A stretch of 64,000 nt of DNA from Ophelia neglecta (taxonomy: Eukaryota). Below, one piece after another: positions 35,119 to 59,000 of this stretch (positions are counted from its first letter, which is position 1; every line of letters begins with the position of its first letter). The notes under the pieces were generated by a model. The model was not told the DNA's origin. It did no database searches and saw only the letters and a list, made by a program, of their open reading frames with translations. The DNA lies in NCBI GenBank assembly GCA_965285935.1, contig OZ260666.1, forward strand, positions 22,754,001 through 22,818,000. Reading direction: 5' to 3'. A program made the position numbers and the translations under genes.

Positions 35119-35134
35119 TACGTAAAGAATGAAC

Positions 35135-39356: not shown

Positions 39357-39580
39357 CAACTTTATGAAGAATTCCCTTCAACGAGGTAAGGAATGGCGAA
39401 ATTATATCGGAGAAACAAGCTATCCTCTCAAATGGGTTTGATGTGTTATCCTTGGTATGTCGTGATCTATAATCCGATAGTTGTAAGAAACGATGTACTT
39501 TATAACTGGGTGTCTGTCTTTGCTGGGCGGTAATAGGTGACACACTTCTGAGAAACGAGAAATAGGGAATTTCCATTACT
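39357..39580 (-). promoter_or_regulatory. Putative promoter and non-coding exon 1 of kelch copy 1: NF-kB site, IRF-like site, TATA box, donor
   Basis: GGGAATTTCC 39565-39574; GAAACGAGAAA 39552-39562; minus TATAAA 39499-39504; minus donor G|GTAAGT at 39356. Matching acceptor TTTGCAG (34752) lies 13 nt upstream of the ATG. Confidence 0.6.
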
Positions 39581-40029
39581 CATAAACTCGCCATGTTTAG
39601 CGGTGTAGAACTCGTTAAATGTATAAGCATGTAAACATGACAAATTGTGCTACGCTATAGCCGTCTGTTAGCTGCGGATCAATATTTAGTGAGACGGACT
39701 AAATGTACGCTGGCCTTCTTTATGTTAGAGTATCAAGTGACGAATAGCCACAGATTACTGAAAATATAGGAAAGTACTGAAAAATAGTCTAATACGTCGT
39801 GTAAATTTACAGTAATAAAATAATCATGTAAATGAAAATACTTGATTATCAGTAGCCTAGATTAGTGGGAATGTGCCGCGCTGAGGGGGGGCAGCAGATG
39901 GGGGGGCGAGTATTGACAAGGCAGGCGAAATTGAGGTCTGTGTGTTTCTCAGAATCTACTGGGATAAGATCACCATGTAGTCAAAGCGTCAACATCTAAG
40001 TATATGCTAAAGGACCAGACACCGGAAAT

Positions 40030-40380
40030 CCTCCCCCCCCCCCTCCCTTCTTCCTCATACTGAGAATGCCCCAGACTGAGTGACATCCTCCCCCCGGGCT
40101 CCCCCCTCCCTCCCCCCCCCCCGGCCTCCCCCCCCCCCCCACACACACCTCACCTCCCTCCTTCCTCGTACTGAGAACACCTGGGACTGAGTGACAACAC
40201 CCCTCCCCCCCTCCCTTCTTCCACCTTTCTCGTAATCCCCCCCCCCCGCCCCCACCTCCACTCCCTCCTTCCTCGTACTGAGAACGCCCTGGACTGAGTG
40301 GCCTCTTCCCCCCCCCCCCTCCCACTCTTCCTCGCACCGAGAACACCCCGGCCTGTGAACCCCCAGACTGGAAGGACACT
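40030..40380. repeat. Poly-C-rich degenerate repeat (ttcctcgtactgagaac...ggactgagtg, 3-4 copies)
   Basis: Visible directly; a single copy occupies the paralogous position ~59600-59655. Confidence 0.7.
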
Positions 40381-41014
40381 GTTATTACCCTTAATTAGTT
40401 TCCATGGGGTCCTGTTGCCGTGACGTGTAACCATGCTACGTTAAATTACAAGATCGTCACTGTAACTGTTGGCAGGTGTTTTCTGGAAATTTCTGTATTT
40501 GCTTTCTAACCAGAAATAAAATTTAGCTTTCAAAGGGAAATGTACACCAAAAAAAAAAAAAAAAAAAAAATCTGTAGAAGTTAAAACCAATACAAAATGT
40601 ATGTATACTGCCGGCGTTCATCTGACGCGTATTCACGATGATATCTTATGTAGTATAAACCTCTTTTAAGGTTATCAACTCATTGTGAATGTGTGGAAAA
40701 AAAGTGGTTTATGCCTACTTCTGATTGTTGTTGCATTCTTACGTTAATATGTCTACTTATTTTTAAAGATACAGAATAGTATTCTCTGTGTCAGACTAGT
40801 CATATACCATATATTACTCGGGACATATCGGGTCCCCCACTGTGCTCAGGCTCAGCCACTGAATCAAGCTCAGAGTCACTTATTATATCAAACCACCAAA
40901 CAATTATTCGCTACTGGTTCAATCCTCTACTCTCTACTGGTGAGAAAAATACAAAAAAATGCAACGGTTGTGCACTGAGTGGCTGAAGAGACGTATGCTG
41001 GTATGTACCACAGT

Positions 41015-41600
41015 TAAAGTGCTTCATCAAGTAATTTCTTCAACAGCTAAGTGTGAATAGCGTCAAGATGACACGAAGCCGCTGTGAACGAGAAATTAGT
41101 TTAGCGACTTCTTCCTGTGAAGCGCCGCTCAACAAATGAAGAGAGGCGCGCTCTGGACATGGTGCCACATAAATGTGTGTCAAGGCATGCGACCAAACTG
41201 GCAAGGCATCCCGAATCGTCTCAAATTCTTCAATGAAAAAATGTGAGAACCAGTCAGCAAATTCTTAATAGAAGCTGTGATCGGGTAGTATCACTGTCTT
41301 ACTCTTTGGGAGCAAACTGTCAAGAATGGACTGAACCGACTTCGCGTCAAAGCCTGCCTCCACGAACCTTAGTATTTTACCTGTTATTGTATAATTTTGG
41401 TAGTTTCTGGTGTCTTTTTAGAGGTTTTCTTGGCAGGCAAGGAAACCTCCTCATCGTATAAATGGATAGTTGTTTTCCATCTCCGTTCTTGTTTATGTTT
41501 CTTCCCCTTAAGGTCATCATCATACCAGAACTGCTGTGAGCCCAGAGAGGCAATCAAGGAATACTGAGCGGCGTAACGGTTCAGCGTTGGCAATATGGTG
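41015..41600 (-). mobile_element. L2-type LINE ORF2 fragment (duplicate of 60835-61430)
   Basis: Colinear with the copy at 60.8-61.4 kb; peptide QQFWYDDDLKGKKHKQERRWK. Confidence 0.7.
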
Positions 41601-42717
41601 GAGTTTAGATGATAAATGTGGAAATGTCAATGTTTCTTCATTTCCTAGTATTGGTTGTTTTTTGCACCACGGGTGTCTTTGAAACACCAACACCACACAA
41701 AATGACACATACATGAAACTGACAATACATATACAGTTGTACTGGTATAGAACTGCGAACTGGTATTTGTAGGCCTGAGCCAGACGGTACCAGATGATTT
41801 CAGACATATCTAGGTATCTCCTCTGGTTTTTTAAACGCTACATTCCAGATAAAGGATTTCGGGTTATCTGCCGGGTATACGAACCTGTTTAACCGCTTAT
41901 TAATGATTGGCGGGAATGTACGTACTACCCCTAACTATGAAAGAACGTTCAAATCAAGAAATGTAACTTGAAGGCCGTTTTTATTGGCGATTATCGAAGC
42001 GCTTAGCACCAGAATTAACAATGAATTAACACACAGATTAAATGGTCTACTGCATCCAATTTACCAAGTCACATAAGTGGCAATACGTGTATGCTAAAGA
42101 AGTGACGGCGTTTACACACTTTGTGCAAATAGCACAAAAATATGTCATCAAACATAATCAAAGAAAATGTTTAAATATCTCAAAACGGGAACAATGTAAG
42201 TCGTGCAAAGTAAATACTAGTGGTTTTAATACAACAGATTCAGAAGGTCTACTCATGTTGCGACACGTGTATGCTAAAGAAGTGAGGATGGGTACACACT
42301 ATGTGCAAATGGCGTCTCACAAAACATAGTCAAAGACGATTTTTGAAAATTTAAATATCATTAACACTGAATGAATGAAATTGAATACTGTTATCATTAT
42401 TTTATATGCTTATGTACTGATCCCCAATAGATAAAATCGTAAGTGCAGGGTCTTCTTAAATAGGCACATATTTTCGGTAATAGAAAACGTACCAATATCA
42501 AGCTTTAGTCATCCTATCTAAATAAAATTAAGTATATGCTCAAGTGCAAGATGGATGTATAAAAAACACCAATAATGCATGAATGAACACATGGATGAAT
42601 GTAGTCATTATACTAAATACTACACCAAATACCGACGATGGATTTGTGGAAGGTTGGAGATTTAAGTCTGTTCAGAAACATGGGCTTCATCATTTTCAAA
42701 TTGTTTCAAATTGTACT

Positions 42718-44805
42718 TCAAACATTATAAATATATGCTGTGACCATACTACTCATTTTATTCGGAAGCTTCAAATCACACATTTCCCACTCATCGGCCT
42801 CGATGTCATATCTTTGTATACAGTCTAGCTTGGTGTTGTCGTTTTTACAATAACCTCCGATGATATAAAACAAGTTATTAATCCTGACAGAGCAACCCAA
42901 ATAACAAGCAAACGTAGGAGGCGAGAGTTCCGTCCACTGATCTTGTATTATATCATAACACTCTGCTGACATGATATCTTTCCATTTACCCTCCATTGAC
43001 ACTCCTCCACCAACCACTACCAGCATACCAACCGCACTAGTCATGGCATGGCACTGACGTACTTGTAACATTGGAGACTTTTCAATCCAAACGTCGTCAC
43101 AGAAGCTAAACAATGTTTTAGTTTTACTACCACCACTGATGTACAGAACTCCGCCTTCATAAGACGCAGCATGCTGAGCTCGTGCTCGTGGCATTGGCAC
43201 CATTCGTGCCCATTTCTGTTTTCGCACGTCATATTTCTCCACACAGACTAAAAGGGTTTTGTGGTCCGATCCACCAACAGCGAAAACGGAATCATCACAT
43301 GTTGTCAAAGTGTGCCAGCATCGTTTCTGTCCCATCTCTTCTAGTTCCAGCCATGCGTTTGAACGAGAGTCAAGCCGGAACATCGTATTTACACAACCAG
43401 ATTCGTTTTGACCACCAGAAACAAATATATATCCATTCATCTCAGCACAAGCACTGCCGATTAATGCGAACGGGGTTTCACAAACATCAGTAAAAGGTGA
43501 CAGGGATACGTTGTCTTTTAAATGGGTAACCTTTGCCGTCAAAACATTTTTGATACAATTATTAGATGAATCTTGTCCCCCCATGATGTAAATGGTTGAA
43601 TGCTTCAGGCGTAGTTTGTTAATGTTTCCCTCGGCTAGTTGTGGGTCATTTGGCCGTAAATGGTACCTCATGGCAGATACATATTTATCATTACATCCTT
43701 GTAAAGGGTGCTCTAATACTACTTCTTCCATTTCTTCTTTCGCCATCAGACCAAATCTTATCAGACCGACTACTCTACGGTTTGTTTCAGCACTTGTATT
43801 GTTGTGTTTGATCCATTTCACTACCGTTTTGAAAATATCAATTTCTGATATTTTTCCTAAATAGTCACTGTCCAGCATCAGGCAGAGTTCATCCTCAGAA
43901 ATGTCCAGAGACAGATCCTTGAAGGCATGTAGACATAACTGGTTGAGATAAGTCACAGACTCAGACCCAGCATACTGCTTGGCCCACTTCACGGCGAGTG
44001 AAGTACCTTGAGCTGTAGGGGATGTTTTCACCAAACCTTCTACACAAGCTTTAATAATGCCAACAAAATTTATTTCCAGTGACAACTCTGTCAATGCTAT
44101 GATGGATGTACCAGTGGCTTCTTTTGGTATGATGAGTTTATCTCCTGGTTGCGCAATATCTCGCATTGCAACGAAAGTATTTTTGTAATTAGTAATTTCA
44201 CCTGTCTCTGCTAATATTACCTCAAGAAAGACATTCATTGCGTAACACCTGTTATTGTCAGACAACGTCCCATGTTCTAGAATCTCCCTGATGAAGGCAG
44301 CGTCCAATCCTTTGATGATTGCTTCCTTAGGAACTTTAGTAATATTATCTAAAATCAGATTAGGAACAAATTCCTTTGGTTGGACTGACCGAGGATGTTT
44401 AAAAGCAGCTCGCAGAAAGTGACACCAAATATTTGCATTAGCATCTGTATTCAAGGCAAAGTTTAAACACTTTTGCACTATGTCCAGGAACTCCAGACCC
44501 AGAGCAGCATCAATGATGTGTTCAAAGTTATCTTCAGAGATCGTAATCTCACCAGAGTAACAATAATCTACAATGAGCTGTAAACCTTTACCCGACATGG
44601 TTTTGACGGCCAGTTCTTTCTTGTTCTGTTTCAAGAGACCAGTAATACGGTTGAACAGAGTCTGGTTACAGGCAGCCATGTATGGTAAATGGACCCTGAC
44701 CTCTCCATCCTTGGCACAGATAACTCCGTCCAGACCAATCTCCATCTCCCTCAGACGAGACATTCTCTCATGGAACCCCAGGTAGTCTGTCGTCGTTACC
44801 TTCAT
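42718..44805 (-). CDS. BTB-BACK-Kelch (KLHL-like Cul3 adaptor) copy 2, 695 aa, single coding exon
   Basis: BTB (VHLPYMAAC...LIVDYCYSGEITISEDN), BACK (LMLDSDYLGKISEIDIFKTVVKWIKHN...LIRFGLM) and six kelch repeats with GG...Y/W motifs. Acceptor at 44819-44820. Confidence 0.93.
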   Translation of the reverse strand: MKVTTTDYLGFHERMSRLREMEIGLDGVICAKDGEVRVHLPYMAACNQTLFNRITGLLKQNKKELAVKTMSGKGLQLIVDYCYSGEITISEDNFEHIIDAALGLEFLDIVQKCLNFALNTDANANIWCHFLRAAFKHPRSVQPKEFVPNLILDNITKVPKEAIIKGLDAAFIREILEHGTLSDNNRCYAMNVFLEVILAETGEITNYKNTFVAMRDIAQPGDKLIIPKEATGTSIIALTELSLEINFVGIIKACVEGLVKTSPTAQGTSLAVKWAKQYAGSESVTYLNQLCLHAFKDLSLDISEDELCLMLDSDYLGKISEIDIFKTVVKWIKHNNTSAETNRRVVGLIRFGLMAKEEMEEVVLEHPLQGCNDKYVSAMRYHLRPNDPQLAEGNINKLRLKHSTIYIMGGQDSSNNCIKNVLTAKVTHLKDNVSLSPFTDVCETPFALIGSACAEMNGYIFVSGGQNESGCVNTMFRLDSRSNAWLELEEMGQKRCWHTLTTCDDSVFAVGGSDHKTLLVCVEKYDVRKQKWARMVPMPRARAQHAASYEGGVLYISGGSKTKTLFSFCDDVWIEKSPMLQVRQCHAMTSAVGMLVVVGGGVSMEGKWKDIMSAECYDIIQDQWTELSPPTFACYLGCSVRINNLFYIIGGYCKNDNTKLDCIQRYDIEADEWEMCDLKLPNKMSSMVTAYIYNV

Positions 44806-45184
44806 TGTTATGATTTCCCTGCAAATATTAATTTGATCTATAGTAAGTTCATTTTTTCACATCACTATGATTTTCTCCCAATAGGAACCAATATGTGATT
44901 CTATCATCGGGTGTACTAGTACCATTTGAAAAATTACAGTACGAAGTCAACTCCCCACCTATAGGCCACGAGGGCTACATATTGTAGAGCTAAATTGGAG
45001 ACAAATACGGCCTGTAGTAAAAGCCGAGCTATAATACGCGCCGCGTCCATAATAAAGGACTGGATAATGAGATCTGTCTATAATAAACGCTGTGTCCATA
45101 ATGAAATCTGGTCTAAAATAATTGCTTTTAGCTCCCCTTAATTAATAAACGCCCGCCGATTATTTAAGTCAATATGGTACGTAA

Positions 45185-46342
45185 AGACTGAACCCTGAAG
45201 ACCGATGGATCCCCAGGATGTGGAACCCCCCGATTGGAGACCCCCGAACTGGCGGACGCGCAGACTGAAAATTACCAGGCTGAGAACCCAGATTGAGTGT
45301 ACCACGGACTGAGGGACCCCCGGGCCAAACACATCCGGGCTGAGAATCCCCTGACTGAGAACCCAGATTGAGTGTACCACGGACTGAGGGACCCCCGGGC
45401 CAAACATATCCGGGCTGAGAATCCCCTGACTGAGAACCCTCGGACTGAGAACCCCTGTTCTGAAAACCTCCAGACTAGGAGTTCCTGGACTGAGAACCCT
45501 CTGACTGAGGGAGCCTCGGACTGAAAACCTAAGGACTAAAAATACTGTGAATTAGGACCCTCGGACTGAGAGACCCCGGACTTAAAACCCCCGTTATTCA
45601 AGTCCTTGGACTGAGAAAGCCCGAAATGAGTTTTCACCGGACTGATGGACCCCCGGACTGAGAACCACCTGACTGAGAGACCCCTGAACTGAGGAACCAC
45701 CGGACTGAAGGCTCCCGGACTGAGAGACCCCCGGACTGAGGGACCCCCGGACTGAGGGACCCCCGGACTGAAGGACCACCGGACTGAAGGCGCCCGGACT
45801 GAGAGACCACCGGACTAATAACCACCGGACTAAGAGACCCCCAGACTGAAGGACCCCTTGGACTGAGAGACCTCCGGATTGAGAGCACCGGACTGAGGGA
45901 CCCCCGGACTGAGAACCACCGGACTGAGAGACCACCGGACTGAGGGACCCCCGGACTGAGAGAGCACCGGACTGAGAGACCACCGGACTGAGGGACCCCC
46001 GGACTGAGAACCACCGGACTGAGAGACCACTGGACTGAGGGACCACCGGACTGAAGGCACCCGGACTGAGAGACCCCCGGACTGAGGGACGCCCGGACTG
46101 AGAACCACCGGACTGAGGGACCCCCGGACTGAGAGACCTCCGGACTGAGAGAGCCCCGGACTGAGAGACCCCGGGGCTGAGGGACCCCCGGACTGAGAGG
46201 CCTCCGGACTGAGAAACCCCGGGACTGAGGGACCCCCGGACTGAGAGACCTCCGGACTGAGAGACCTTTGGACTGAGAGACCTCCGGACTGAGAGACCTT
46301 TGGACTGAGAGAGCACCGGACTGAGGGACCCCGGACTGAGGG
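45185..46342. repeat. GGACTGAG minisatellite, paralogue of 35135-36825
   Basis: Same units and same flanks. Confidence 0.95.
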
Positions 46343-48040
46343 AACTTTTATTATTTAACGCCAGGAAGGTGGTGGTGGCTGGGGGGGGGGGAGCAAACGA
46401 TGAGCGATAAAATTTTCCCGACGTGGTTGTATCAATGTTCTCGCATATAGGCATTTGTGGCGGGGGGGGGGGGGCAAATGGAGACAGAATGGCCCAGAAG
46501 TTTACCTCCTTATGAGTTCTGATAGGGAAAATAGTTTACTCCACATAGCAACCCGACCGATCCCGCCGGACCCTCATCACCCCTTCTAATATCTTCCCTC
46601 CCTGTTTCCGCCTCTTGTTTGAATGCATACATGTGCTTTCGTGTTCCCGAATCCCGAGACAGTGAAAACCTAGACTCTTGCAAGCGATAACACGTAGGCC
46701 GAGGTTCTGCTCGGAATCCGACCTTTAGCCGTAACATTAAGCAGATAGCATGCACGCACGCCGAAAGAATTTATATTATTATCTCGTACTTTCAACCAAG
46801 GAATATAACTGCTGCGTTTATTGCAATATTAAGTAGTAAAAACCTTCATATAGATGAGGAAGTTTGGGAAGCTCTTGTTTTAGACTTGAGTCTTAGAAAA
46901 GAAGTAGTTTAAAAGCCTCGATCTGATTTAAATAGGTCAGAAACTTAAGTCTACATATCGTGTTCTCTGTGTATGTCCAATGTATTCAGAAGAAAAAGAG
47001 GTATATATATCGACGCATGGGAGTCAGTCACGTCGTATTGAATTTTATTATATTAAGATGATCCTAAAATCTAGTAATGATGCTGCCATGCCAGCTCATA
47101 CAACCAGGTCAATGGCAGATGGTGTATATTTATGCACGGCAACCCCTACGACCCCCTACCACCCCCAACCCTCCCCTCCCCCTACATACTGTACAGTATC
47201 AAATGGCCCGTCACTTAAGAAACCTCAAATTAATGCAACACATCAACTTGGTAGTTACAAATACAGAAAAAACATGGAAAGTTATGTATCGCACATTTGG
47301 TTTATCAGTTTTTCAGCTTAATTTATCAAGATACAAATTCTCTCCCTAGGTACAATTATAATAATACGATTATAAAAGCCGTGCCGCCCGGTGTATCACG
47401 GGACATTTGGATAGAAATACAAGTGTATAAGCTCCATTATGATCCGTTTGGATTATATATATATGTATGTATGTATGTATCCAAATGGTCATCCACACAT
47501 ATTTCCGAAAAGCTGTCATATGTACCGGATTACCATGATCTTTGTATAAGAACCAGTATAATAGCCATCTTGTTCCATATTTCCCTCGTTGTGACCTTGA
47601 TAAACAATTATTGGAATACAGACCCCCCTTCCGGTGGATGGTGATCACAGGACGCTGGAGAAATTACTTTTTGAAAATGAATTGCGCGCTCACATACTTT
47701 GTAATCTAAACCGTATATTGTGTTCTTTTGTATAATTTGTTCTTTTGGTGGATATTGGTGGTGTGGGTTGGATGTTGGATCTTCCATGCACCGAGAGTTA
47801 TGCCCCCCTCCCCTTCCAACGTCCTCTACTAAAACCTCCATTATCAGAACCCCCGAGACTAAAAGCGTCAGACATCCTAAAGTTAATATGTCAGCTAGAC
47901 CTAAAACAGGAGACTATCACCTGGGCTGATGACTTGTCCCGCTATAACGTTGAGACATATAATATAGATCTTCTGGCTACAATGTGTAATGGTAGATTTA
48001 ACAATCAGTGTGGTAATACAGCTAGTAAAATGGCACTTAC

Positions 48041-48270
48041 CAGATTAATTAACAAATCCCTTCAACGAGGTAAGAAATGGCGAAAATATATCGGAGAAAC
48101 AAACTATCCTCCCAAATGGGTTTGATGTGTTATCCTTGGTATGTCGTGATGTATAATCAGATAGTTGTTAGATACGATGTACTTCAACTTTATAACTGTA
48201 TGTCTATAGTTGCTAGGCAGTAACATGTGACACACTTATGAAACCCGAGAAATAGGGAATTTCCATTACT
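48041..48270 (-). promoter_or_regulatory. Putative promoter and non-coding exon 1 of kelch copy 2
   Basis: GGGAATTTCC 48255-48264; minus TATAAA 48189-48194; minus donor G|GTAAGT at 48040. Confidence 0.6.
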
Positions 48271-49039
48271 CATAAACCCGCTAGGCTAGAAGTGAAGAAC
48301 TAGTTAAACGCTTAAGCATGTAAACATGGCAAATGGTGCTGTGCTATAGCCGTCGGTTACGTGCTAAACAGTATTAACTCAGGGATTATAATGTACCCTG
48401 GACCTTACGTTCGACTATTAAGTGATCGATAGCCACCGATTACTGATAAGAACAGTTCTGCAAAAATAACCTAATATTACGGGTACATTTAAAACGAAAA
48501 TAGTACAACAGGTAAATAAAATACTTGATAACCAGTAGCCCAGATTATTACTGCATGACCCGGTATTGGGTGAGCGACAGCGGATGAGTGGGGGTCGTAT
48601 TAACATGGCAGGTGATTCGAGCCCTGTGTTTTCTGTGCTTCTACTGGAATAACATCATGTAGTCAAAACGTTAACATCCAAGTCTATGTGAAAGGACCAA
48701 ATACCGGAAGCCCTAGCTCAATCGCCTCTTCCTCTTTCCCCCTGCCTGAGATACCCCCCCCCCTGCATCCCGCGGACTCGGAACGCCCCGCAATAAAGAC
48801 CCACCCCCTACCCAAAACCCATCTGCTGCAGACAAACCTATCAATCCTTCTAACTTCCAATAGTGTCACGTCTGATCATTTGTTTTACATTGATTATTAT
48901 GTTGGTCACCCGGCTTGTTGCTCTGACTCTGTGAAAACGGTGTCAGCCAGTATTATCATATACGAATATTTCAATATCAATTAATTTGACAATGATTCTG
49001 TATCTTGAACATTATCAATTGTTAAGGCTCTTTGCCAAT

Positions 49040-49378: not shown

Positions 49379-49477
49379 TCCAATAATATTACCTGTAAGG
49401 TAGGTATGGTGGGGGTAGGGAGGTGGAGGGGAGGGGGGGGGTAGGGGTTGCAATACAATCTTAGTTAGCGCTATATA

Positions 49478-49775
49478 GGGCTGAGAGACGCCCGGGCTGA
49501 GAGACGCCCGGGCTGAGAGACACCAGAGCTGAGAGACCCCAGGGCTGAGAGACTCCAGGGCTGAGAGACCCCAGGGCTGAGAGACCCCAGGGCTGAGAGA
49601 CGCCCGGAATAAGAGACCCCCAGGCTGAGAGACCCACGGGCTGAGAGACCCCAGGGCTGAGAGACCCCCGGGCTGAGAGACCCCAGGGCTGAGAGACCCC
49701 ATGGCTGAGAGACCCCAGGGCGTAGAGTCCTCAGTTATGGGAGCCCTTAGTACTGCGAGCCCCCAGGGCTGAGCT
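49478..49775. repeat. 16-bp minisatellite variant (GGGCTGAGAGACCCCA)
   Basis: Visible directly. Confidence 0.9.
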
Positions 49776-49820
49776 TTAGCCCTTTGAACAATATCCACCT
49801 GCAGACAGGCACATCTTTTT

Positions 49821-49987: not shown

Positions 49988-50313
49988 TGTTGACACTAGG
50001 TAGGATTGGAATTTAACCGATTAAACTGGTTGGGTTTTAAACCACTAGGTTTATGCAACCCAATTATCTTACTAGTCACAAGTTAGCCGTCAAGATAGCG
50101 TTAAATACTAAAAGAGTTATTCAACAGGCCCCTTAACTGAGTGACACCCGAACTGAGAGTCGGAATTAGGATGGTGGGTGGACTTAAATACTTCTGGACT
50201 GAGAGTCCCCCGGGCTGAGGGACCCACATACTGATGGATCCATGACCTCGCTACATGGGTCAGCTAATGGTACACACAGTACACAGATTGGTCAGGAAGA
50301 TACACGAATTGTA

Positions 50314-50520
50314 ACTTACCTGATTTACCAAGACTTCCCAACGTGATAAGGAATGGCGTAATTACATCGGCAAACACTCTATTTTGAATGACACGATACC
50401 TGTACAAGTCAATGTTATAAGAGGGGACCTACTTGAACTTTATGACTGTGCACCTGTCGTTGTCAGGCCGTAACATGTCACACACTTAATACCGAGAATC
50501 AGGTAAATTCCATTACTCAC
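50314..50520 (-). promoter_or_regulatory. Diverged extra copy of the promoter/exon-1 module
   Basis: acttacc donor (50314-50320), taaggaatggcg, gtaacatgtcacacactt and ggtaaattccattactca are all colinear with 48035-48272. The TATA box and kB site carry substitutions. Confidence 0.5.
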
Positions 50521-52345
50521 TAGACTTGCAATCTTATTGTAATATTCTACTAGTTAGATGAACAAGCATGCAAAAGGTAGTTGTGTTTTCCGTGAGTTAC
50601 TTGATGATAACAGTATCGGCACTGGACGGTACTGGAATATATTATATAAATATCATTTACCATCACAAGAACCCCCCCCCCCCCAAAAAAAAAACAAACA
50701 AAAAAAAAAACAAAAAAAAAAACAATATTATTTTGGGCCAAATAATGACTTTGCACATTTACTTTGTATACAAAAAATAATGGAAAGTCTAATACTAAAT
50801 TTAATATCTGACTGAATTTGACACCGACAACAATCAGTTTTTGAGTCAGCAACATATATCAGAATACATTTCTTATACCACGATAGGCCCCACAAAGTCA
50901 ATAGATACATCACGGTATTCTTGTTTTATATTGCTTTAGTGTAATACTTTCAATTTAGTACACTCCTAAATAAAAGCATGTCGGCAAAATGTCTGCCCAA
51001 ATATAATATTATAATTATACTGTATGGCATACTTCATTTATTGTTGTACGTAGACGAAAGTTCAAATAAAATAATGTGGCTGGATGGGTGTACATATGAA
51101 GTCGGGTAAGGCAGGGGTCATTTATCATGGGTGAGGTAAGGTTCGTGGCCGGGTGACAAAAGGGATAGATGGCGGATCCGGCGGGGTAGGGGTGGGCAAG
51201 TGGGCACATGTATGATGGGTGAGGTGAAGACGATTCCTGGATGATCAGGGGGGTGGGTGGGGGAATGGGGTGATATGGGAACCATTGGATCCATTTTTTA
51301 TAGATGAGGTGAGGAAAATGTACGGATGACCAGATGGGTTGACGGGAAATGGGGCCCGGTGGGGAGGACAAATAACGGGATGACGGGTCTCTGGCTAACA
51401 CTATGCCGATAAAGCAGTGCTTACATGTAACATGTTACATTCCAATGACAAAGGGAATAAGGCACAAAGTGTGCTTATGTTCATCACTAGAAACGCCAAT
51501 GAACATATAAAGAAGTGCATGTGCCAGAGAGAAAAACATACTAAGATACCCGCGGCCCAGTTGGCGGAACGCAACCGAGTTGCATGTCTAATTAATGGCA
51601 CATGGTCTTTGTTGGCTGTTGTTTTAACCTGTTAACCCCGATGTAGGTGTTGGTGCTCGTTCATTATACAGGTTTCCACGACATGATTCAAAGCACACAA
51701 CAAACGATTGGGATGTAAGCCTACCGTGTCTTTAATACTACTACTCATCTTTGATGGTTATACTAATGAATGGGTCAGGTGTTCTTTAAAGGAACCATAT
51801 AAACTAAGAAGCAAATCGACAAGGCAGTCATTTAGACAAACGTGCGTTCAAATTACTTTCAAAAAAGTTAATTTAAATATTAAACATGTACAACGAATTC
51901 TCCGTGTAATAAGTCCTCGGGCGATGCCAAAGCCTGGTGATTTTTTGCTGTTTTAGTTGCTGGCCGTGTCAACCTCCCTAAAGTCCCGTGTGATTGATCT
52001 CAGGCGTTGTGCGGGTACCAGAAATGACTGGTCTCCATACTATTGCGTTCGGAGAATCAAGACGGAGCTTTCCTATATGGAACGCAGATGGAATTGTGTC
52101 CGTTTAACATTCTTTGATACAAGTTCTTTTCAAGGAAAGATACGGGTTAAGCACAGCGCCTAGTCACAGTAACAATCTGGATTACTGCACCCAGCAATGT
52201 TAAGGATTGGCACATTTTGGCCATGAATATACATAAAACATTCTGCATTGTTTATACAGCATTGTTCAACCATCGCATTAAAAAAAAGCGATTTTAGCTT
52301 TAAGATAATTCAAGGTCAGAGTGACTTTGGTAGTTCATTGGCATT

Positions 52346-54433
52346 TCATTTATTATCAATACATGCTCCGACCGACCGACTCATTTTGTATGGTAGTTTG
52401 CAATTACACACTTCCCATTCATTGGCCTCGATGTTAAACCTTTGAATACAGTCTAGCTTAGTTTTGTCGTTTTGACTATAACCCCCGATGATATAAAACC
52501 AGTTATTAATCCTGACAGAGCAACCTAAACCGCAAGCAAACTTAGGAGGCGAGAGTTCCGTCCACTGATCTTGTATTATATCATAGCACTCTGCTGACGT
52601 CACGTCATTCCATTTACCGTCCAACTTCACACCTCCACCAGCAACTACCAGCATACCAACCACACTAGTCATGGCATGGCACTGACGTACTTGTAACATT
52701 GGAGACTTTTCAACCCAAACGTTGTCACAGAAGCTATACAGTGTCTTAGACTGACTACCTCCACTGATATACAGAACTCCGTCTTCATAAGACGCAGCAT
52801 GCTGACCTCGTGCTCTGGGCATTGGCACCAAAAGTGCCCATTTCTTTTTTCGCGCGTCATATTTCTCCACACAGACTAATGGGGTTTCGCCGTCCCATCC
52901 ACCAACAGCGAAAAGGGAATCACCACATGTTGTCAGAGTGTGCCTGCATCGTTCCTGTCCCATCTCTTCTAGTTCCAGCCATACGTTTGAACGAGAGTCA
53001 AGCCGGAACATCGTATTTACACAGCCAGATTCGTTTTCACCACCAGAAACAAATATAAATCCATCCATAGTAGCACAAGCACTGTTAAATAAGGCGAACG
53101 GGGTTTCACAAGCATCAGTAAAAGGTGACAGGGATACGTTGCCTTTTAAATGGGTAACTTTTGACGCCAAAACTTTTTTTATATAATTATTAGATGAATC
53201 TTTTCCCCCCATGATGTAAATGGTCGAATGCTTCAAGCGTAGTTTGTTAATGTTTCCCTCGGCTAGTCGTGGGTCATTTGGCCTTAAATGGGACCTCATG
53301 GCTGATACAAAGATAGGCTCACAGCCAGGTAAATCGTACTCGACAAATACTTCATCCATTTCATCCTTTGTCATCAGACCAAATCTTATCAGACCGACTA
53401 CTCTACGGTTTGTTTCATCACTTGTATTATTGTGTTTGATCCATTTCACTACCGTTTTGAAAATATCAATTTCTGATATTTTTCCTAAATAGTCACTGTC
53501 CAGCATCAGGCAGAGTTCATCCTCAGAAATGTCCAGAGACAGATCCTTGAAGGCATGTAGACATAACTGGTTGAGATAGATCACAGACTCAGACACAGCA
53601 TACTGCTTGGCCCACTTCAATGCGTGTGAAGTAACGTCAGGTGTAGGGGACGTTTCTATCAAAACATCTACACAGGCTCCAATAAGACCAGCAAAGTTTA
53701 TTTCCAGTGACATTTCAATCAAAGCTATGATGGATGTTCCATTGTCTTCAGTTATTATGGTCAGATTATCATCTGGCTGCACAATATCTCGCATGCGACA
53801 GAGAGTATCTTTGTAATTTGAAAGTTCACCTGCTTCCGCTAGTAGTACCTCCAGAAAGACATTCATTGCGTAACACCTGTTATTTGCAGACAATGTCCCA
53901 TGTTCTAGAATCTCCCCGATAAAGGCAGCATCCAATCCTTTAAAGACTGCTTCCTTGGGAACTTCAGTAATATTATCTAAAATCAGATTGGGAACAAATT
54001 CCTTTGGTTGGACTGACCGAGGATGTTTAAAAGCTGCTCGCAGGAAGTGACACCAAATATTTGCATTGGCATCTGTATTCAAGGCAAAGTTTAAACACTC
54101 CTGCACTATGTCCAGGAACTCCAGACCCAGAGCGGCATCAATGACGTGTTCAAAGTTATCTTCAGAGATCGTAATCTCACCAGAGTAACAATAATCTACA
54201 ATGAGCTGTAAACCTTTACCCGACATGGTTTTGACGGCCAGGTCTTTCTTGTCCTGTTTCCAGAGACCAGTAATACGGTTGAACAGAGTCTGGTTACAGG
54301 CAGCCATGTATGGTAGATGGACCCTGACCTCTCCATCCTTGGCACAGATAACTCCGTCCAGACCGATCTCCATCTCCCTCAGACGAGACATTCTCTCATG
54401 GAACCCCAGGTAGTCTGTCGTTGTTACCTTCAT
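52346..54433 (-). CDS. BTB-BACK-Kelch copy 3, 695 aa, single coding exon
   Basis: Same architecture as copy 2 with an intact ORF; acceptor at 54447-54448. Confidence 0.93.
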   Translation of the reverse strand: MKVTTTDYLGFHERMSRLREMEIGLDGVICAKDGEVRVHLPYMAACNQTLFNRITGLWKQDKKDLAVKTMSGKGLQLIVDYCYSGEITISEDNFEHVIDAALGLEFLDIVQECLNFALNTDANANIWCHFLRAAFKHPRSVQPKEFVPNLILDNITEVPKEAVFKGLDAAFIGEILEHGTLSANNRCYAMNVFLEVLLAEAGELSNYKDTLCRMRDIVQPDDNLTIITEDNGTSIIALIEMSLEINFAGLIGACVDVLIETSPTPDVTSHALKWAKQYAVSESVIYLNQLCLHAFKDLSLDISEDELCLMLDSDYLGKISEIDIFKTVVKWIKHNNTSDETNRRVVGLIRFGLMTKDEMDEVFVEYDLPGCEPIFVSAMRSHLRPNDPRLAEGNINKLRLKHSTIYIMGGKDSSNNYIKKVLASKVTHLKGNVSLSPFTDACETPFALFNSACATMDGFIFVSGGENESGCVNTMFRLDSRSNVWLELEEMGQERCRHTLTTCGDSLFAVGGWDGETPLVCVEKYDARKKKWALLVPMPRARGQHAASYEDGVLYISGGSQSKTLYSFCDNVWVEKSPMLQVRQCHAMTSVVGMLVVAGGGVKLDGKWNDVTSAECYDIIQDQWTELSPPKFACGLGCSVRINNWFYIIGGYSQNDKTKLDCIQRFNIEANEWEVCNCKLPYKMSRSVGACIDNK

Positions 54434-55059
54434 TGTTATGATTTCCCTGCAAATATTTATTTGATCTATTGTAAGTAAGTTCTTTTTTTCACATAACTAT
54501 GATCCTCTCCCAATAGGAACCAACCAATATGTGATTCTCTCATCGGGTGTACTTTTACCATGTGAAAAATCACAGTTCGAAGACAACTCCCCACGTATAG
54601 GCCACGAGAGCTACATATTGTAGAGCTAAATTGGAGACAAATACAACCTTTAGTAAAAACCGAGCTATAATACGCGCCGGGTCAATAATAATTGACTGGA
54701 TTGTGAGATTAACAAAATCGGTCTAAAATAAACGCCGTGACTATAATGAATTACGGCCTCAAATAAACGCCGGGTCTATTAGCTCCCCGTTATTTCTAAA
54801 CGCTCGCCGATTATTTTAGTGTATACTGCTGAAGCCCCCCCCCCCCTTGCCAAAGCTCCACTGTTCAAGAGTCCTCTAGAATGACGAACCCACACATTAC
54901 TGAAGACCCCCCCCCCCTCTGACTGAGAGCCTCCAAACAGAGAGCACCATGACCCAAGAAACCCTGGGCATTGATGCAGAGGCTGTTGCACCTCTCTCAC
55001 CGCAACGAGAAAACGCAAAATGCCCCCCCCCCCCACGCCCCCCGCGACCTGGACTCTGA

Positions 55060-55950
55060 AAGAACGATCACCGGATTGAGGATCCCTGTAATAAATCGGT
55101 GGGATAGTGGACCACCTGACTAAAGGCTCCCCAGACTGTGAGTCCTCGGACTGAGAACACATCAGACTGAATCTCAGTCCGAGAGCTTTGTCTAGGAATC
55201 CGACAGAACGGGAAGTTCTCGTTCCATGGGTCTTTTTAGTAGTCCGCGGATTCTCAGTCCGTGGGTTCTGGCTCAGGGAGCCCCTGAGTCCATGCTTCTC
55301 GCTAGGGAGTCCCTTAATTCGGTGGGTTCCCACTCCTGGGTTTGGAGGGCTATCATTCCGGGTTCCCTCTCGGGTTGGGAGCCCCCAGTCAGGGGTCTTT
55401 CAGTCCGTGGTCCCTCATTCCGAAGATCCCTCCGGGAGTCTATTCCCGAACCTCAGACTGAGGGATCCTCAGGACGAGGAACCCCTGGACGGAGAAACCC
55501 GGACTGTCGGACACGCAGACTGAAAAGTACAACGCTGAGTGAACCCCGGACTGAGTGACCCCCAGACCGAAAACCTCCGAACTGAGAGTCCCAAGACTGA
55601 GAACCCTCGGATTGAGAGACCCCCGGACTGAGGGACCCCCGGACTGAGAGACCCCCGGACTGAGAGACCCCCGGACTGAGAGACCCCCGGACTGAGAGAC
55701 CACTGGACTGAGAGACCACTGGACTGAGAGACCCTCGGACTGAGAGGACCCCGGACTGAGAGACCACTGGACTGAGAGACCACTGGACTGATGGACCCCG
55801 GACTGAGAGACCATCCTACTGAAGGACCCAGGACTGGGAGACGCCCGGATGGAGGGACCACCGGACTGAGAGACCATCGGACTGAGAAACCCTTAGACTG
55901 AGAGACCCCTGGACTGAGAGACCATCGGACTGAGGGACCATCGGACTCTC
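55060..55950. repeat. GGACTGAG minisatellite of copy 3, including an inverted block at ~55250-55440
   Basis: ggactgag units on +, with ctcagtcc-type units in the inverted block. Confidence 0.85.
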
Positions 55951-56049
55951 CCAAGGTAAAATTATAATGATACGATTAGAAAAGCAGTGCTGCCGCCCGG
56001 TGTATAACGGGAGATTTGAATAGAAATACAAGTTTATAAGGTTTATTAT

Positions 56050-57144
56050 TGTAACAGTGTCATATCTACGTGCTTTCCCTACATTATATATGCCCTGTAT
56101 GCTAATGTTGGTTGACATTAGGTAATTTATGCTTGCTAGTGGCTCTGTTACGGTCTGGAAGTCAGCTGGGTTCACTGATGCATGTAACTGGGGCCAACCT
56201 TTGTAACCTCTCCATTTTTATGTCAGAGTTTGAATTCTGACCCTGGATTTACCTAATTATGTTTGCGTAATAGCCAATTATATTACTGGCTCCAACCCTT
56301 TGTCTCGACAAACTTTCCAGTGATTCAGCACAGTTGGCCTAGGGAGTTCACTTGAAGAGGACATGTTCAGATGTCTGGAATATTTTGTGTTTAGGACAAT
56401 TCATGAAGAGGTTTGTCAATGTAATCTCGATCTCAAGCTGCCCAGGCTATGTATATTATGTACTTGTTCCTACTTTGTGACCAATATGCTGTACTGCCTA
56501 TTGTGTTTGTTGGTGAAATCTAGATCTCATGTAGCCCTAGCCTAGCTGTAAATAACTATACTTTACTAGGTGGCCAATATACTGTGTTGCATATAGATAA
56601 ATATTTAGATAAATAATGTCCTGATTGTCAGATTGTCACTTATACTGGTTACAAACTTATTTTAGATTGGTCTCCTTTTGCATTCTAGGTATATGTCCTG
56701 TTGATGTGACTATAGTTTGTAGTCATCCTGATCTATACCTGTAAGTCTGGGCCAGTTGTCATTTGGCCAGTCAGCACCGTTAACCAAGGTATACACTCGT
56801 GTTTATGAAACGTGATGATTATGTTAAGGATTCGCACTAGTAAATTAGTGTGTTAGAGAATTGAATGCCGGCATTATGCATGAAAGTTAAATACCATAAA
56901 ATATGTAATATTTGTCCTGTATTAAACAAACCGTAAATGTGTATATATGTTTTGTTATCACAGGAAAAAGGTACATTTCTAAAGTTGCATCTGAATGGTT
57001 GCATGTAGCTTATGATTGTGTTTTAATTATTACAGGTGCTTAAATATAGACGGGTTGTTCATTGATGGATTGTGAATAAACTTTATGTACCTAAGTGGAC
57101 GTGCCACTTCGACTCACTCCCCCCCCCCCCCCTCCTTGGTTACA
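56050..57144 (+). mobile_element. Solo LTR (1095 bp), Gypsy-like by 4-bp TSD
   Basis: ttat|TGTAAC ... GTTACA|ttat; AATAAA at ~57075; empty site in the paralogous intron at ~47430-47445 (ataagctccattatgatccg). Confidence 0.85.
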
Positions 57145-57607
57145 TTATGATCCGTCTGGATTTGTCTATTGGAGAGAGGCGAGCTTATTTTACTGGTATT
57201 CCTATATATAAGTCCGAATGGTCATCCACACATATCTCCGATAAGCTGTCATATGTACCGGATTACCATTACCATAAGAACCAGTATAATAGCCATCTTG
57301 TTCCATATACCCTCTGTGTGGCCTGATAAATAATCTTTGGATTAAAGAACCCCGACGCCCAGCCCCTTCCGGTGGAATGGTAATCCCAGGACGCTAGAGA
57401 CAATCCTTTTTTGAAAATGTAGTTTTAACCTTAAATGTAAAGATTTTTTTATTTTGGTTGACATTGGTGGTGTGGGTTGAAAGTTCAAGGATCTTCCATT
57501 CACCGTGAGTCATGTTCCCCTCCCCTCCCCCACCCCTCACTTCCATCGTCCTGTTTTAAGAGCTCCGGTTTTTTTCAAGCGTCACCCCCTCTTGGGTCTA
57601 AGGGCCC

Positions 57608-58298
57608 ATGGACTGACAGTTACCCTGACTGAGGACCCCGGACTGTGAAGCCCCCGGACGGAGAACCCCAGCCTGATTGATCCCGGACTCAGAACCCTCG
57701 GGGACTGAGAGACCCCCGGGTATGAGAGACCCCCGGAGTGGGAGCTACTGGACGGAGAACCCCAGACTGATTAATCCCGGACTCAGAACCCCCGGGGACT
57801 GAGACCCCCGGGTATGAGAGACCCCCGGAATGGGAGCCCATGGACGGAGAACCCCAGACTGATTAATCCCCGGACCGAGAACCCCGTACGGAAAACCCCG
57901 GACTGATTGATACCCGGACTCAGAACCCCCGGGGACTGAGACCCCCGGGGACTGAGAGACCCCCGGGTATGAGAGACCCCCCGAGTGGGAGCTACTGGAC
58001 GGAGAACCCCAGACTGATTAATCCCCGGACCGAGAACCCCGGACGGAAAACCCCGGACTGATTGATACCCGGACTCAGAACCCCCGGGGACTGAGACCCC
58101 CGGGGACCGAGAGACCCCCGGGTATGAGAGACCCCCCGAATGGGAGCCACTGGACGGAGAACCCCAGACTGATTAATCCCCGGACCGAGAACCCCGGACG
58201 GAAACCCCGGACTGATTGATACCCGGACTCAGAACCACCGGGGACTCAGAACCCGCGGGGACTGAGACCCCCGGGTATGAGAGACCCCCGGAGTGAGA
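57608..58298. repeat. Compound GGACTGA minisatellite with a 155-bp higher-order period
   Basis: tggacggagaaccccagactgattaatc at 57841, 57996 and 58151. Confidence 0.9.
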
Positions 58299-58774
58299 GC
58301 TACATGCATTCATCTATGACCTGTTGACGCTTTTATTATAGAAACTTGCCGTTGCCATTTACAAAATTTCGACTTATTTGCTAGGTTTAAAGAAAATGAC
58401 TTGCAAAGACCGACTATATGAAAATCTGTAATACTAACTGGAAACTTAAGAACTGATCATTTGCTGACCCATTAAAGCTTCTACCAACGTAACCGCCCAC
58501 CCAAATAACATAGTGCCTTGAGCATATTAGTCCATTTTATCGGTGATTTATAGGTTTGAAAGTCGTCATTTTCCAGTAACTTTTTCTTTATTGTCAATTC
58601 ATATCAATGTGTATAGCTTCTTGAAAAATTAATATGTCAGCTAGACTTAAAACAGGTGACTGATGACGTGTCCCGCTATAACATTGAGACATATAATATA
58701 GATCTTCTGGCTACAATGTGTAATGGTACATTTAACACTCAGTGTGGTAATACAGCTAGTAAAAGGGCACTTAC

Positions 58775-59000
58775 CAGATTAATCAACAATCCTCTTCAAC
58801 GAGGTAAGGAATGGCGAAATTATATCCGAGAAACAAGCTTTCCTCTCAAATGGGTTTGATGTGTTATCCTTGGTATGTCGTGATGTATAATCGGACAGTT
58901 GTGTAAGATACGATGTACTTTATAGCCGCGTGTCTATTTTTGCTGGGCGGTAACATGTGACACACTTCTGAAAAACGAGAAATAGGGAATTTCCATTACT
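58775..59000 (-). promoter_or_regulatory. Putative promoter and non-coding exon 1 of kelch copy 3
   Basis: GGGAATTTCC 58985-58994; minus TATAAA 58919-58924; minus donor G|GTAAGT at 58774. Confidence 0.6.

What the first reader, a model, noticed from the sequence alone, without database searches (positions are those of the whole stretch)
39357..59000. Each fully visible kelch copy has a hidden upstream module: NF-kB site, TATA box, non-coding exon and donor
Seen: 3-5 kb upstream of each CDS, in the right order for minus-strand transcription, lie a perfect GGGAATTTCC (39565, 48255, 58985), an adjacent GAAA-rich element (gaaacgagaaa in copy 1), TATAAA ~60 bp further on (39499, 48189, 58919) and a G|GTAAGT donor ~140 bp beyond that (39356, 48040, 58774). 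Each CDS has a TTTGCAG acceptor exactly 13 nt before its ATG. The block cgagaaatagggaatttccattactca is identical in all three copies while neighbouring sequence differs. Known: GGGRNWYYCC is the Rel/NF-kB consensus and GAAANNGAAA the IRF consensus (spacing here is 3, so imperfect). Inference: the array is immune-inducible, which independently supports the previous finding.
Basis: partly seen in the sequence, partly recalled or inferred. Interest (0 to 1): 0.75.

Follow-up and report, generated by a model that had tools for sequence, protein, structure and literature searches.

The report
Shared kB-type promoter of kelch genes
Each kelch gene in this invertebrate tandem array has, a few kilobases upstream, the same conserved block that looks like a switchable promoter with a short non-coding first exon, which gives a testable but still untested handle on how the whole gene family is turned on.

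Summary
Every motif sits at the stated coordinates in all three copies. The three occurrences are paralogous copies of one ancestral block, not independent events.

The same block precedes 24 genes of this BTB-BACK-Kelch family in three arrays on one chromosome. One array was noted earlier by the scan (s1-736067).

Two upstream subtypes are only 0.55-0.74 alike. Identity jumps to 0.95 exactly at the kB element and stays at 0.84-0.96 through TATA, exon 1, donor and about 160 nt of intron.

A rigid composite (kB site, 2 nt, TTTCTCG, 1 nt, TTTTC on the gene strand) also survives in:
- a 64%-identical promoter class;
- a paralog on another chromosome with 51% protein identity.

All 20 genome-wide matches lie beside this family; the control found 0.

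Donor and acceptor are conserved to the same depth. The genome encodes p65/c-Rel-type and p105-type factors and at least 7 IRF loci.

No RNA data could be obtained: the only runs found behave like DNA. Promoter and leader exon are therefore well supported by comparison. Rel-family control is plausible. Immune induction remains an inference. The IRF reading is weak because the spacing is wrong.

The parts
39556..39582 (-). Copy 1 composite element. On the gene strand: TGAGTAA (AP-1-like), kB site (39565-39574), 2 nt, TTTCTCG.
   Evidence: conserved in 24 copies and in deep paralogs
39499..39504 (-). Copy 1 TATAAA
   Evidence: TATAAA intact in 22 of 24 main-class copies
39357..39470 (-). Copy 1 putative non-coding exon 1. 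The 5' end is inferred at about 30 nt past the TATA; the 3' end is at the G|GTAAGT donor.
   Evidence: no RNA evidence
39198..39356 (-). Copy 1 conserved first ~160 nt of the intron. Function unexplained; includes the palindrome CAGGTGAnnnTCACCTG.
   Evidence: no RNA-structure signal
34752..39356 (-). Copy 1 putative leader intron (4.6 kb, rich in tandem repeats)
32660..34751 (-). Copy 1 exon 2: 13-nt leader, ATG at 34738, BTB-BACK-Kelch CDS interrupted by one TAA.
48246..48272 (-). Copy 2 composite element (kB 48255-48264)
48189..48194 (-). Copy 2 TATAAA, followed by a private 6-nt insertion
48041..48160 (-). Copy 2 putative exon 1 (5' end inferred)
44819..48040 (-). Copy 2 putative leader intron (3.2 kb). 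The first ~160 nt (47880-48040) are conserved.
42718..44818 (-). Copy 2 exon 2: 13-nt leader, ATG at 44805, intact 695-aa BTB-BACK-Kelch CDS.
58976..59002 (-). Copy 3 composite element (kB 58985-58994)
58919..58924 (-). Copy 3 TATAAA
58775..58894 (-). Copy 3 putative exon 1 (5' end inferred)
54447..58774 (-). Copy 3 putative leader intron (4.3 kb)
52346..54446 (-). Copy 3 exon 2: 13-nt leader, ATG at 54433, intact 695-aa CDS.

Best explanation
The block is the shared promoter and 5' leader of a family of about 30 single-coding-exon BTB-BACK-Kelch genes. Transcription would start about 30 nt past the TATA box and produce a non-coding exon of about 115 nt. That exon would be spliced, across a variable 1.2-6 kb intron, to an acceptor 13 nt before the ATG. 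At the 5' edge of the conserved core sits a rigid composite element. On the gene strand it reads: an AP-1-like heptamer, a kB-type site, 2 nt, TTTCTCG, 1 nt, TTTTC. I take the kB part as the docking site of a Rel-homology factor, since the genome encodes one p65/c-Rel type and one p105/p100 type. The GAAA-rich neighbour would bind a co-operating partner, possibly an IRF. On this reading the whole array is switched on together by a signal, most likely an immune or stress signal.

Shown: the anatomy, its conservation at three depths, its restriction to this family, and the presence of the factors' genes.
Inferred: the start site, the splicing, which factor binds, and inducibility.
For: EXTENT AND COLLINEARITY.
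- 24 main-class copies were found: 23 by the 27-mer and one more by an independent exon-1 probe. 23 of them lie collinear with, and upstream of, a kelch CDS; one (L017) has no CDS within 8.5 kb.
- One of the three arrays is inverted relative to the other two, and the module inverts with the gene.

SHARP CONSERVATION STEP.
- Two upstream subtypes are 0.55-0.74 alike upstream.
- They are 0.95 alike at the composite and 0.84-0.96 alike up to 160 nt past the donor, then 0.63.

DEEP FOOTPRINT.
- The divergent class is 64% alike overall. It keeps TGAGTCA, GGATTTTCCC, 2 nt, TTTCTCG, and the CTGGTAAG donor.
- The chromosome-2 paralog (51% protein identity) keeps GGGGAATCCCC, TTTCTCG at the same spacing, a GTGAGT donor, and an acceptor 13 nt before the ATG. 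Nothing else in its 5 kb upstream aligns.
- All 20 genome-wide matches to GGRWWTYCCCNNTTTCTCG lie beside this family; the reversed-pattern control gives 0.

FIT TO kB DEFINITIONS.
- Three different 10/11-mers all keep the G-run and C-run ends that define kB sites.
- The main-class 10-mer equals the MCP-1 kB site as printed in PMC9991059 (passages read).

OTHER POINTS.
- A rival donor (CAG|GTGATA) is not conserved.
- 17 of 24 copies have no ATG between TATA and donor.
- Rel-type and p105-type RHD loci and at least 7 IRF loci exist.
Against: - No RNA evidence. The three runs found cover all 30 bins, intron included, and show no leader-to-CDS joint, so they say nothing about transcripts.
- Within the main class the conservation may be partly gene conversion or recent duplication. 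Four-fold sites of the first 1200 nt of the CDS are 0.904 alike, against 0.919 for exon 1 and 0.924 for the post-donor stretch.
- The kB 10-mer alone is only in the top eighth of 10-nt windows (109 of 869).
- It is altered in 5 of 24 copies, and 3 of those 5 have an intact CDS.
- Module integrity does not track CDS integrity: 10 of 14 against 6 of 9.
- TATAAA is missing in the divergent class and on chromosome 2.
- The conserved core runs 160 nt past the proposed donor, which the exon model does not explain.
- The divergent-class site fails the classic GGGRNWYYCC consensus at one position.
- GAAANNGAAA is not met in any class.
- Paralogs at 39% identity show no composite within 3 kb.
Confidence: 0.55

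Rival explanations
1. The block is the family's promoter and leader, but the kB resemblance is incidental. The element would be bound by some other factor, or the promoter would be constitutive or tissue-specific, and the within-class identity would come from recent duplication and gene conversion.
For: - Four-fold CDS sites are as alike as exon 1 (0.904 against 0.919).
- The 10-mer ranks only 109 of 869.
- 5 of 24 copies carry a changed 10-mer, 3 of them with an intact CDS.
- A conserved 390-nt block has roughly a 5-10% chance of holding some kB-consensus match (my arithmetic from the consensus degeneracy).
- The window has 17 GGGRNWYYCC matches against 8.9 expected, many of them in repeats.
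Against: - Three sequence-different versions of the site keep the GGG...CC ends and a fixed 2-nt distance to TTTCTCG, across paralogs down to 51% protein identity.
- In the chromosome-2 paralog no neighbouring sequence aligns.
- The composite occurs nowhere else in 762 Mb.
- It sits exactly at the 5' edge of the conserved core.
Confidence: 0.22
2. The block is not the kelch promoter. It would be a separate unit carried along in each repeat, such as an enhancer, a non-coding transcript or an antisense exon. The CDS would be transcribed from a start close to the acceptor-like AG or from another exon.
For: - No RNA evidence for the junction.
- Conservation continues 160 nt past the proposed donor.
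- The opposite strand also carries a GAG|GTAAGG in exon 1 of the main class.
- Copy L012 has lost the donor by deletion, and L023 and L027 carry G+1>A. Of these three, L012 and L027 keep an open CDS.
- L030 lacks the composite and TATA yet has an open CDS.
Against: - Orientation and order relative to the CDS are constant in all copies and flip with the gene in the inverted array.
- Donor and acceptor are conserved at every depth examined, including chromosome 2.
- The antisense donor is not kept in the divergent class.
- Paralogs at 39% identity also have an acceptor 15-21 nt before the ATG, so a leader intron is a family trait.
- There is no Rfam match and no RNA-structure signal.
Confidence: 0.13
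3. The promoter is inducible, but by a non-immune signal (osmotic, oxidative or developmental) acting through the TGGAAA core and the AP-1-like site rather than through an immune Rel pathway.
For: - The main-class site contains TGGAAA next to TGAGTAA or TGAGTCA. This recalls NFAT-type and AP-1 composite sites (recalled, not tested).
- AP-1 is a general stress effector (established knowledge).
Against: - The Pfam RHD search found only two loci. Their first exons match p65/c-Rel and p105/p100 best, not NFAT. The search gives a lower bound.
- TGGAAA is not kept in the divergent class on that strand, and the AP-1-like heptamer is absent on chromosome 2.
Confidence: 0.1

Closest known systems
[quoted passage not shown]
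   Same: A GAAA half-site lies exactly 2 nt from a 10-bp kB site. The enhancer DNA printed in PMC3116919 (structure 2O61, passages read) reads ...GAAAGTGGGAAATTCC.... All three classes here read GAAA + 2 nt + kB on the window + strand. The spacing is rigid and conserved. A bZIP-type site is nearby in the chromosome-9 arrays.
   Different: - Only one clear GAAA half-site is present, where PRDI-III has four IRF sites.
- The second GAAA is out of register for GAAANNGAAA.
- The AP-1-like site abuts the kB site on the opposite side instead of lying beyond the IRF sites.
- The element drives a kelch gene family in an invertebrate.
- No binding or induction data exist.
Vertebrate kB sites (MCP-1, IL-6, MHC-type palindromes)
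   Same: The main-class 10-mer is identical to the MCP-1 kB DNA. The divergent class holds 10 of the 11 bases of the IL-6 kB site. The chromosome-2 site is an 11-bp 5+1+5 palindrome of the kind preferred by p50/p52 homodimers (definitions from PMC9991059 passages).
   Different: Sequence match only. The binding preferences of this species' Rel and p105-type proteins are unknown.
Shared immune-type promoter grammars noted elsewhere in this genome (s1-739860, an ARF-like GTPase array with NF-kB + CRE)
   Same: A tandem gene family carries a common kB-containing promoter block. In this window a kB palindrome plus a perfect CRE lies at 22055-22077.
   Different: The partner motif differs (CRE there, TTTCTCG and an AP-1-like site here). 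I did not examine that other locus, so it is an unchecked AI note.
KLHL-type BTB-BACK-Kelch Cullin-3 substrate adaptors
   Same: The genes driven by the module have BTB, BACK and Kelch repeats.
   Different: This is a lineage-specific tandem expansion of about 30 genes with a single coding exon. The closest database protein found is 25% identical.

Membership tests
kB (Rel/NF-kB) response element | Matches the classic consensus GGGRNWYYCC (as given in PMC9991059) | tested here: met
   The main class (GGGAATTTCC; 19 of 24 copies exact) and the chromosome-2 paralog (GGGGAATCCC within GGGGAATCCCC) match. The divergent class (GGGAAAATCC) fails at one position and fits only the broadened GGGNNNNNCC.
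kB (Rel/NF-kB) response element | A Rel-homology transcription factor is encoded by the organism | tested here: met
   There are two RHD loci. Their first exons match p65/c-Rel best (E 4.6e-18) and p105/p100 best (E 6.4e-14).
kB (Rel/NF-kB) response element | Bound by the factor and required for induced transcription | not testable with these tools
   Needs EMSA, DAP-seq or ChIP, and reporter mutagenesis.
ISRE / IRF element | Two GAAA half-sites with a 2-nt spacer (GAAANNGAAA) | tested here: not met
   The spacer is 3 nt in copy 1 and 5 nt (or out of register by one) in most copies. Only the kB-proximal GAAA is deeply conserved. IRF genes are present at 7 or more loci.
AP-1 / TRE | TGA(G/C)TCA heptamer (recalled consensus) | tested here: inconclusive
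   Perfect TGAGTCA in 3 of 3 divergent-class copies. TGAGTAA (one mismatch) in 24 of 24 main-class copies. Absent from the chromosome-2 paralog.
TATA-box core promoter | TATAAA about 25-35 nt upstream of a mapped start site | tested here: inconclusive
   TATAAA is present in 22 of 24 main-class copies. It is absent from the divergent class and the chromosome-2 paralog. No start site has been mapped.
Non-coding first exon with leader intron | Conserved GT donor and AG acceptor in the right order and strand | tested here: met
   Donor: 21 of 24 main-class copies, 3 of 3 divergent-class copies, and a GTGAGT on chromosome 2. Acceptor: all 24 copies in which the ATG probe matched, plus chromosome 2 at the same 13-nt distance.
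Non-coding first exon with leader intron | Spliced transcripts joining the two exons | tested here: inconclusive
   The only runs found (X1-X3) are contigs covering intron and exon alike, with no such joint. No RNA run was available.
Interferon-beta-type enhanceosome | Contiguous ATF-2/c-Jun, four IRF sites and an NF-kB site | tested here: not met
   Only the GAAA-2 nt-kB junction is shared. The IRF array is missing and the bZIP-like site is on the other side.

The most novel reading that the evidence does not exclude
A repertoire of about 30 diversifying Kelch-type ubiquitin-ligase adaptors in a mollusc is wired as one regulon to an ancient, rigidly spaced Rel-plus-partner composite. That composite resembles the kB/IRF junction of the vertebrate interferon-beta enhancer and predates the split of the chromosome-9 arrays from a chromosome-2 paralog. 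If so, the array would be an infection-inducible, intracellular, ubiquitin-based receptor battery, and enhanceosome-like kB/IRF grammar would be older than vertebrate interferon.
Probability: 0.2. Interest if true: 0.7.

Novelty: new member of a known kind. Interest (0 to 1): 0.4.

Why it matters
If the module works as proposed, one short element would control a whole expanded family of putative substrate-recognition proteins whose targets are unknown. That turns 'what is this array for?' into a direct experiment:
- challenge the animal and count the predicted junction reads;
- mutate about 25 bases in a reporter.

The fixed GAAA-2 nt-kB spacing is conserved across deep paralogs. This offers a test of whether co-operative Rel/IRF promoter grammar exists in lophotrochozoans. 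As it stands, this is a well-supported promoter and leader prediction with an untested regulatory reading. That is useful for annotation, because these genes would otherwise be modelled without their first exon, but it is not surprising in kind.

Tried and rejected
RNA EVIDENCE. The look-up of sequencing runs listed three runs of one sample, none on record as RNA. Read laying showed contigs over all 30 bins, intron included, and no leader-to-CDS joint. The runs behave like DNA, so the splicing test could not be made.

CROSS-SPECIES FOOTPRINT.
- The protein search found one hit at 25% identity among 8000 scored candidates, so there were no close relatives to follow.
- A metagenome scan with the 25-nt degenerate composite gave 8 contigs with unrelated flanks and no kelch match. 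These are chance hits.

STRUCTURED RNA OR KNOWN RNA FAMILY IN THE CONSERVED POST-DONOR STRETCH.
- Rfam gave 0 matches in the window.
- Folding z-scores were -0.43 and -1.33.
- This reading is rejected.

TRANSPOSON-DERIVED PROMOTER. Both the exon-1 probe and the 486-nt upstream probe hit only beside this family on chromosome 9. This reading is rejected.

LINK BETWEEN MODULE INTEGRITY AND CDS INTEGRITY.
- Among the 23 main-class copies that have a CDS, the CDS is open in 10 of 14 with an intact module and in 6 of 9 with an altered module.
- Three further copies have lost the composite by deletion or replacement (L030 with an open CDS; L031 and L032 with a split CDS).
- There is no association.

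ALTERNATIVE DONOR. CAG|GTGATA lies 120 nt downstream. It is deleted in copy 3 and absent from the divergent class. This reading is rejected.

MORE DISTANT PARALOGS (39% identity, L037-L039). An acceptor lies near the ATG, but there is no composite within 3 kb.

LITERATURE.
- Searches for kelch expansions in molluscs with an immune link and for mollusc kB/ISRE promoters returned nothing on such an array in the listings I saw.
- I read passages only of PMC5557890, PMC3116919 and PMC9991059. All other titles were seen as search listings.
- Supplements were not opened. Those of PMC5557890 might hold reporter details.

UNEXAMINED COPY. Gene C9:21538984 has only a weak 56-nt exon-1 hit, and its upstream region was not examined.

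Full report
WHAT IS THERE.
The window is G000:C9:22754001-22818000. From about 32.6 kb onward it holds a tandem array with a unit of about 10 kb.

Each unit carries, on the minus strand, a single open reading frame for a BTB-BACK-Kelch protein:
- 42718-44805 and 52346-54433 are intact, each 695 aa.
- 32660-34738 is interrupted by one TAA.
- A fourth copy begins at 63733 and runs off the window.

THE OBSERVATION.
- GGGAATTTCC occurs exactly three times, at 39565, 48255 and 58985.
- The 27-mer is identical in all three copies.
- On the minus strand, TATAAA follows about 61 nt later and G|GTAAGT about 142 nt after that.
- TTTGCAG lies 13 nt before each ATG.
- GGTAAGT is not frequent in the window: 5 matches against 8.8 expected. 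Three of the five are these donors.

The three occurrences are paralogous copies of one ancestral block, so the shuffle statistics overstate their independence.

HOW FAR THE BLOCK EXTENDS IN THE GENOME.
- The 27-mer, with up to 2 mismatches, occurs 23 times in 762 Mb. All are on contig C9, in three arrays: 21.32-21.57 Mb, the window, and 23.05-23.09 Mb.
- A probe that excludes the kB site (exon 1 plus the start of the intron) recovers the same copies plus one more, L029. It also finds three partial copies and a weakly similar class.
- A protein search finds about 30 genes of the family in these arrays. 20 have an undisturbed frame. More distant paralogs lie on C2 and elsewhere on C9.
- The module lies upstream of a CDS in the same orientation for 23 of the 24 main-class copies. 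In the arrays where the genes are on the other strand, the module is inverted with them.
- One copy, L017, has no CDS within 8.5 kb.
- Neither exon 1 nor the 486 nt upstream of the kB site occurs anywhere else in the genome, so this is not a dispersed repeat.

CONSERVATION PROFILE.
In an alignment of the 24 main-class copies, per-column identity is about 0.8 upstream. It rises at the composite element and stays high until about 160 nt past the donor.

The clearest view comes from two upstream subtypes:
- Between them, identity is 0.55-0.74 over most of the 450 nt upstream.
- It is 0.95 in the 30 columns holding the composite.
- It is 0.84-0.96 through TATA, exon 1, donor and the first 160 nt of the intron.
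- It then falls to 0.63.

The 27-mer is among the two best conserved 27-nt windows (rank 13 of 852). The kB 10-mer alone is exact in 19 of 24 copies and ranks 109 of 869.

A caution applies. Mean pairwise identity at four-fold degenerate sites of the first 1200 nt of the CDS is 0.904. That is about the same as exon 1 (0.919) and the post-donor stretch (0.924), and above the upstream region (0.79). Homogenisation by gene conversion cannot be excluded as a contributor within the main class.

DEEPER PARALOGS SETTLE THE QUESTION OF CONSTRAINT.
A divergent promoter class lies upstream of three CDS copies, including the fourth gene of the window's array, whose promoter lies beyond the window end. 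It is only about 64% identical to the main class. It still keeps:
- the heptamer, now a perfect TGAGTCA;
- a kB-like GGATTTTCCC;
- 2 nt and then TTTCTCG;
- the 3' end of exon 1;
- the CTGGTAAG donor.
The TTTCCAG acceptor 13 nt before the ATG is also kept in the two of these three copies where the ATG probe matched.

Upstream of the C2 paralog (51% protein identity), the only alignable piece in 5 kb is the composite itself. It reads GGGGAATCCCC followed, at the same spacing, by TTTCTCG, one base and TTTTC, about 850 nt before the ATG. ATCTG|GTGAGT follows about 238 nt later, and TTTGTAG lies exactly 13 nt before the ATG.

A degenerate pattern covering the three versions (GGRWWTYCCCNNTTTCTCG) has 20 matches in the whole genome. 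All are beside members of this family, and the reversed control gives none. The stricter 25-nt form has 11 matches, with the same result.

Three paralogs at 39% identity keep an acceptor 15-21 nt before the ATG, but show no composite within 3 kb.

The picture is therefore:
- The leader intron is a family trait.
- The composite is a trait of the C9 arrays plus one C2 gene.
- The composite has been kept while the surrounding sequence decayed.

WHAT THE COMPOSITE LOOKS LIKE.
By the definitions quoted in PMC9991059 (passages):
- The main-class site equals the MCP-1 kB site and fits GGGRNWYYCC.
- The C2 site is an 11-bp 5+1+5 palindrome that also fits.
- The divergent-class site fits only the broadened GGGNNNNNCC.

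The three sites differ in their inner bases but keep the G-run and C-run ends, which are the base-specific contacts.

On the window + strand, each class reads GAAA, 2 nt, then the kB site. The interferon-beta enhancer DNA printed in PMC3116919 (structure 2O61; passages) has the same GAAA-2 nt-kB arrangement at the PRDI/PRDII junction.

The second GAAA is 3 nt away in copy 1 and further away or out of register elsewhere, so GAAANNGAAA is never met.

The AP-1-like heptamer is one base off the recalled TGA(G/C)TCA consensus in the main class. It is perfect in the divergent class and absent on C2.

ARE THE FACTORS THERE?
- The genome has two Rel-homology loci.
- The first exon of one matches p65/c-Rel best. 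The first exon of the other matches p105/p100 best.
- At least seven IRF loci exist.
- Earlier notes of the scan treat the genome as a mollusc (s1-739860, unchecked).
[quoted passage not shown] Vertebrate-type sites are therefore plausibly read by molluscan factors.

THE GENE MODEL.
For the splicing model:
- The donor and acceptor are conserved at all depths.
- A nearby alternative donor is not conserved.
- Intron length varies from 1.2 to 6.0 kb and is filled with tandem repeats.
- A branch-point-like CTTAC run is conserved 25-40 nt before the AG.
- 17 of 24 copies have no ATG between the TATA and the donor.

Against it, or unexplained by it:
- No transcript evidence could be obtained. The three runs found are one sample, cover intron and exon alike, and show no such joint.
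- The core stays conserved for 160 nt beyond the donor. This stretch has no RNA-structure signal and no Rfam match.
- Several copies have a damaged module but an open CDS. L012 has its donor deleted, L027 has the donor G+1>A and a changed kB site, and L030 has the composite replaced.
- Module integrity does not track CDS integrity: 10 of 14 against 6 of 9.

I did not build or search any joined exon sequence.

VERDICT.
- The promoter and leader-exon reading is well supported by comparison, though not by RNA.
- The kB-type site is a genuine, family-specific, deeply conserved element with rigid spacing to a GAAA-containing neighbour.
- Control by a Rel-family factor is the best single reading.
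- Immune induction is a reasonable but untested inference.
- The IRF and TATA parts are the weakest.

In kind this is an ordinary inducible-type promoter with a leader intron. Its interest lies in the fact that it would put a whole diversifying kelch repertoire under one switch, and in the enhanceosome-like spacing.

Noticed in passing
window 22055-22095 (+), with 24464-24958 (+): An 11-bp kB palindrome GGGGAATCCCC, the same 11-mer as in the chromosome-2 kelch paralog, is followed 4 nt later by a perfect CRE (TGACGTCA) and then by CTCGTTTTTC. It lies about 2.4 kb upstream of an ORF with a fibrinogen C-terminal domain (Pfam E 1.1e-44), a lectin-type domain. This recalls the 'NF-kB + CRE' grammar noted elsewhere in this genome (s1-739860).
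   Followed up: partly
window 39198-39356, 47880-48040, about 58625-58774 (minus strand): The first ~160 nt of the putative leader intron are as conserved as exon 1 (0.92 pairwise) and partly kept in the divergent class. They include the palindrome CAGGTGA-nnn-TCACCTG (two E-box-like halves), which is deleted in copy 3. There is no RNA-structure signal. The function is unexplained.
   Followed up: partly
window 33925-33941 region (copy 1 CDS): Copy 1 of the kelch gene carries one in-frame TAA that splits the frame into 265 + 421 codons, while its upstream module is fully intact.
   Followed up: no
L017 (G000:C9:21511180 region); L012, L023, L027, L030-L032: Natural 'mutants' of the module:
- L017: an orphan module with no CDS within 8.5 kb.
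- L012: a copy with the donor deleted.
- L023 and L027: donor G+1>A.
- L030-L032: the composite is deleted or replaced.
Several of these still have an open CDS.
   Followed up: partly
window 35453-36787, 45573-46407, 49440-49775, 57660-58165: The leader introns and intergenic spacers are filled with 16-nt and 47-nt period tandem repeats. In copy 3 there are repeated units that each carry a GGGGTTCTCC (kB-consensus-like) word, which inflates the window's count of kB matches.
   Followed up: no
window 19217-20640 and 5527-6239: Long tandem arrays with 26-nt period (over 40 copies) and 31-nt period (16 copies). They generate spurious long ORFs on the minus strand.
   Followed up: no
window 838-1686 (+): ORF with a rhodopsin-family 7TM receptor match (Pfam 7tm_1, E 5.6e-15).
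   Followed up: no
G000:C9 arrays, upstream 450 nt of the module: The main-class copies fall into two upstream subtypes, about 74% alike, that share a nearly identical core. This hints at recombination or conversion with a breakpoint at the composite element.
   Followed up: partly
L037, L038, L039 (paralogs at 39% identity on C2 and C9): These distant family members also have an acceptor-like YAG 15-21 nt before the ATG, so a non-coding first exon seems general for single-coding-exon kelch genes here. L037 has TTTCAGTTTC (ISRE-like on the other strand) about 1.1 kb upstream of its ATG.
   Followed up: no
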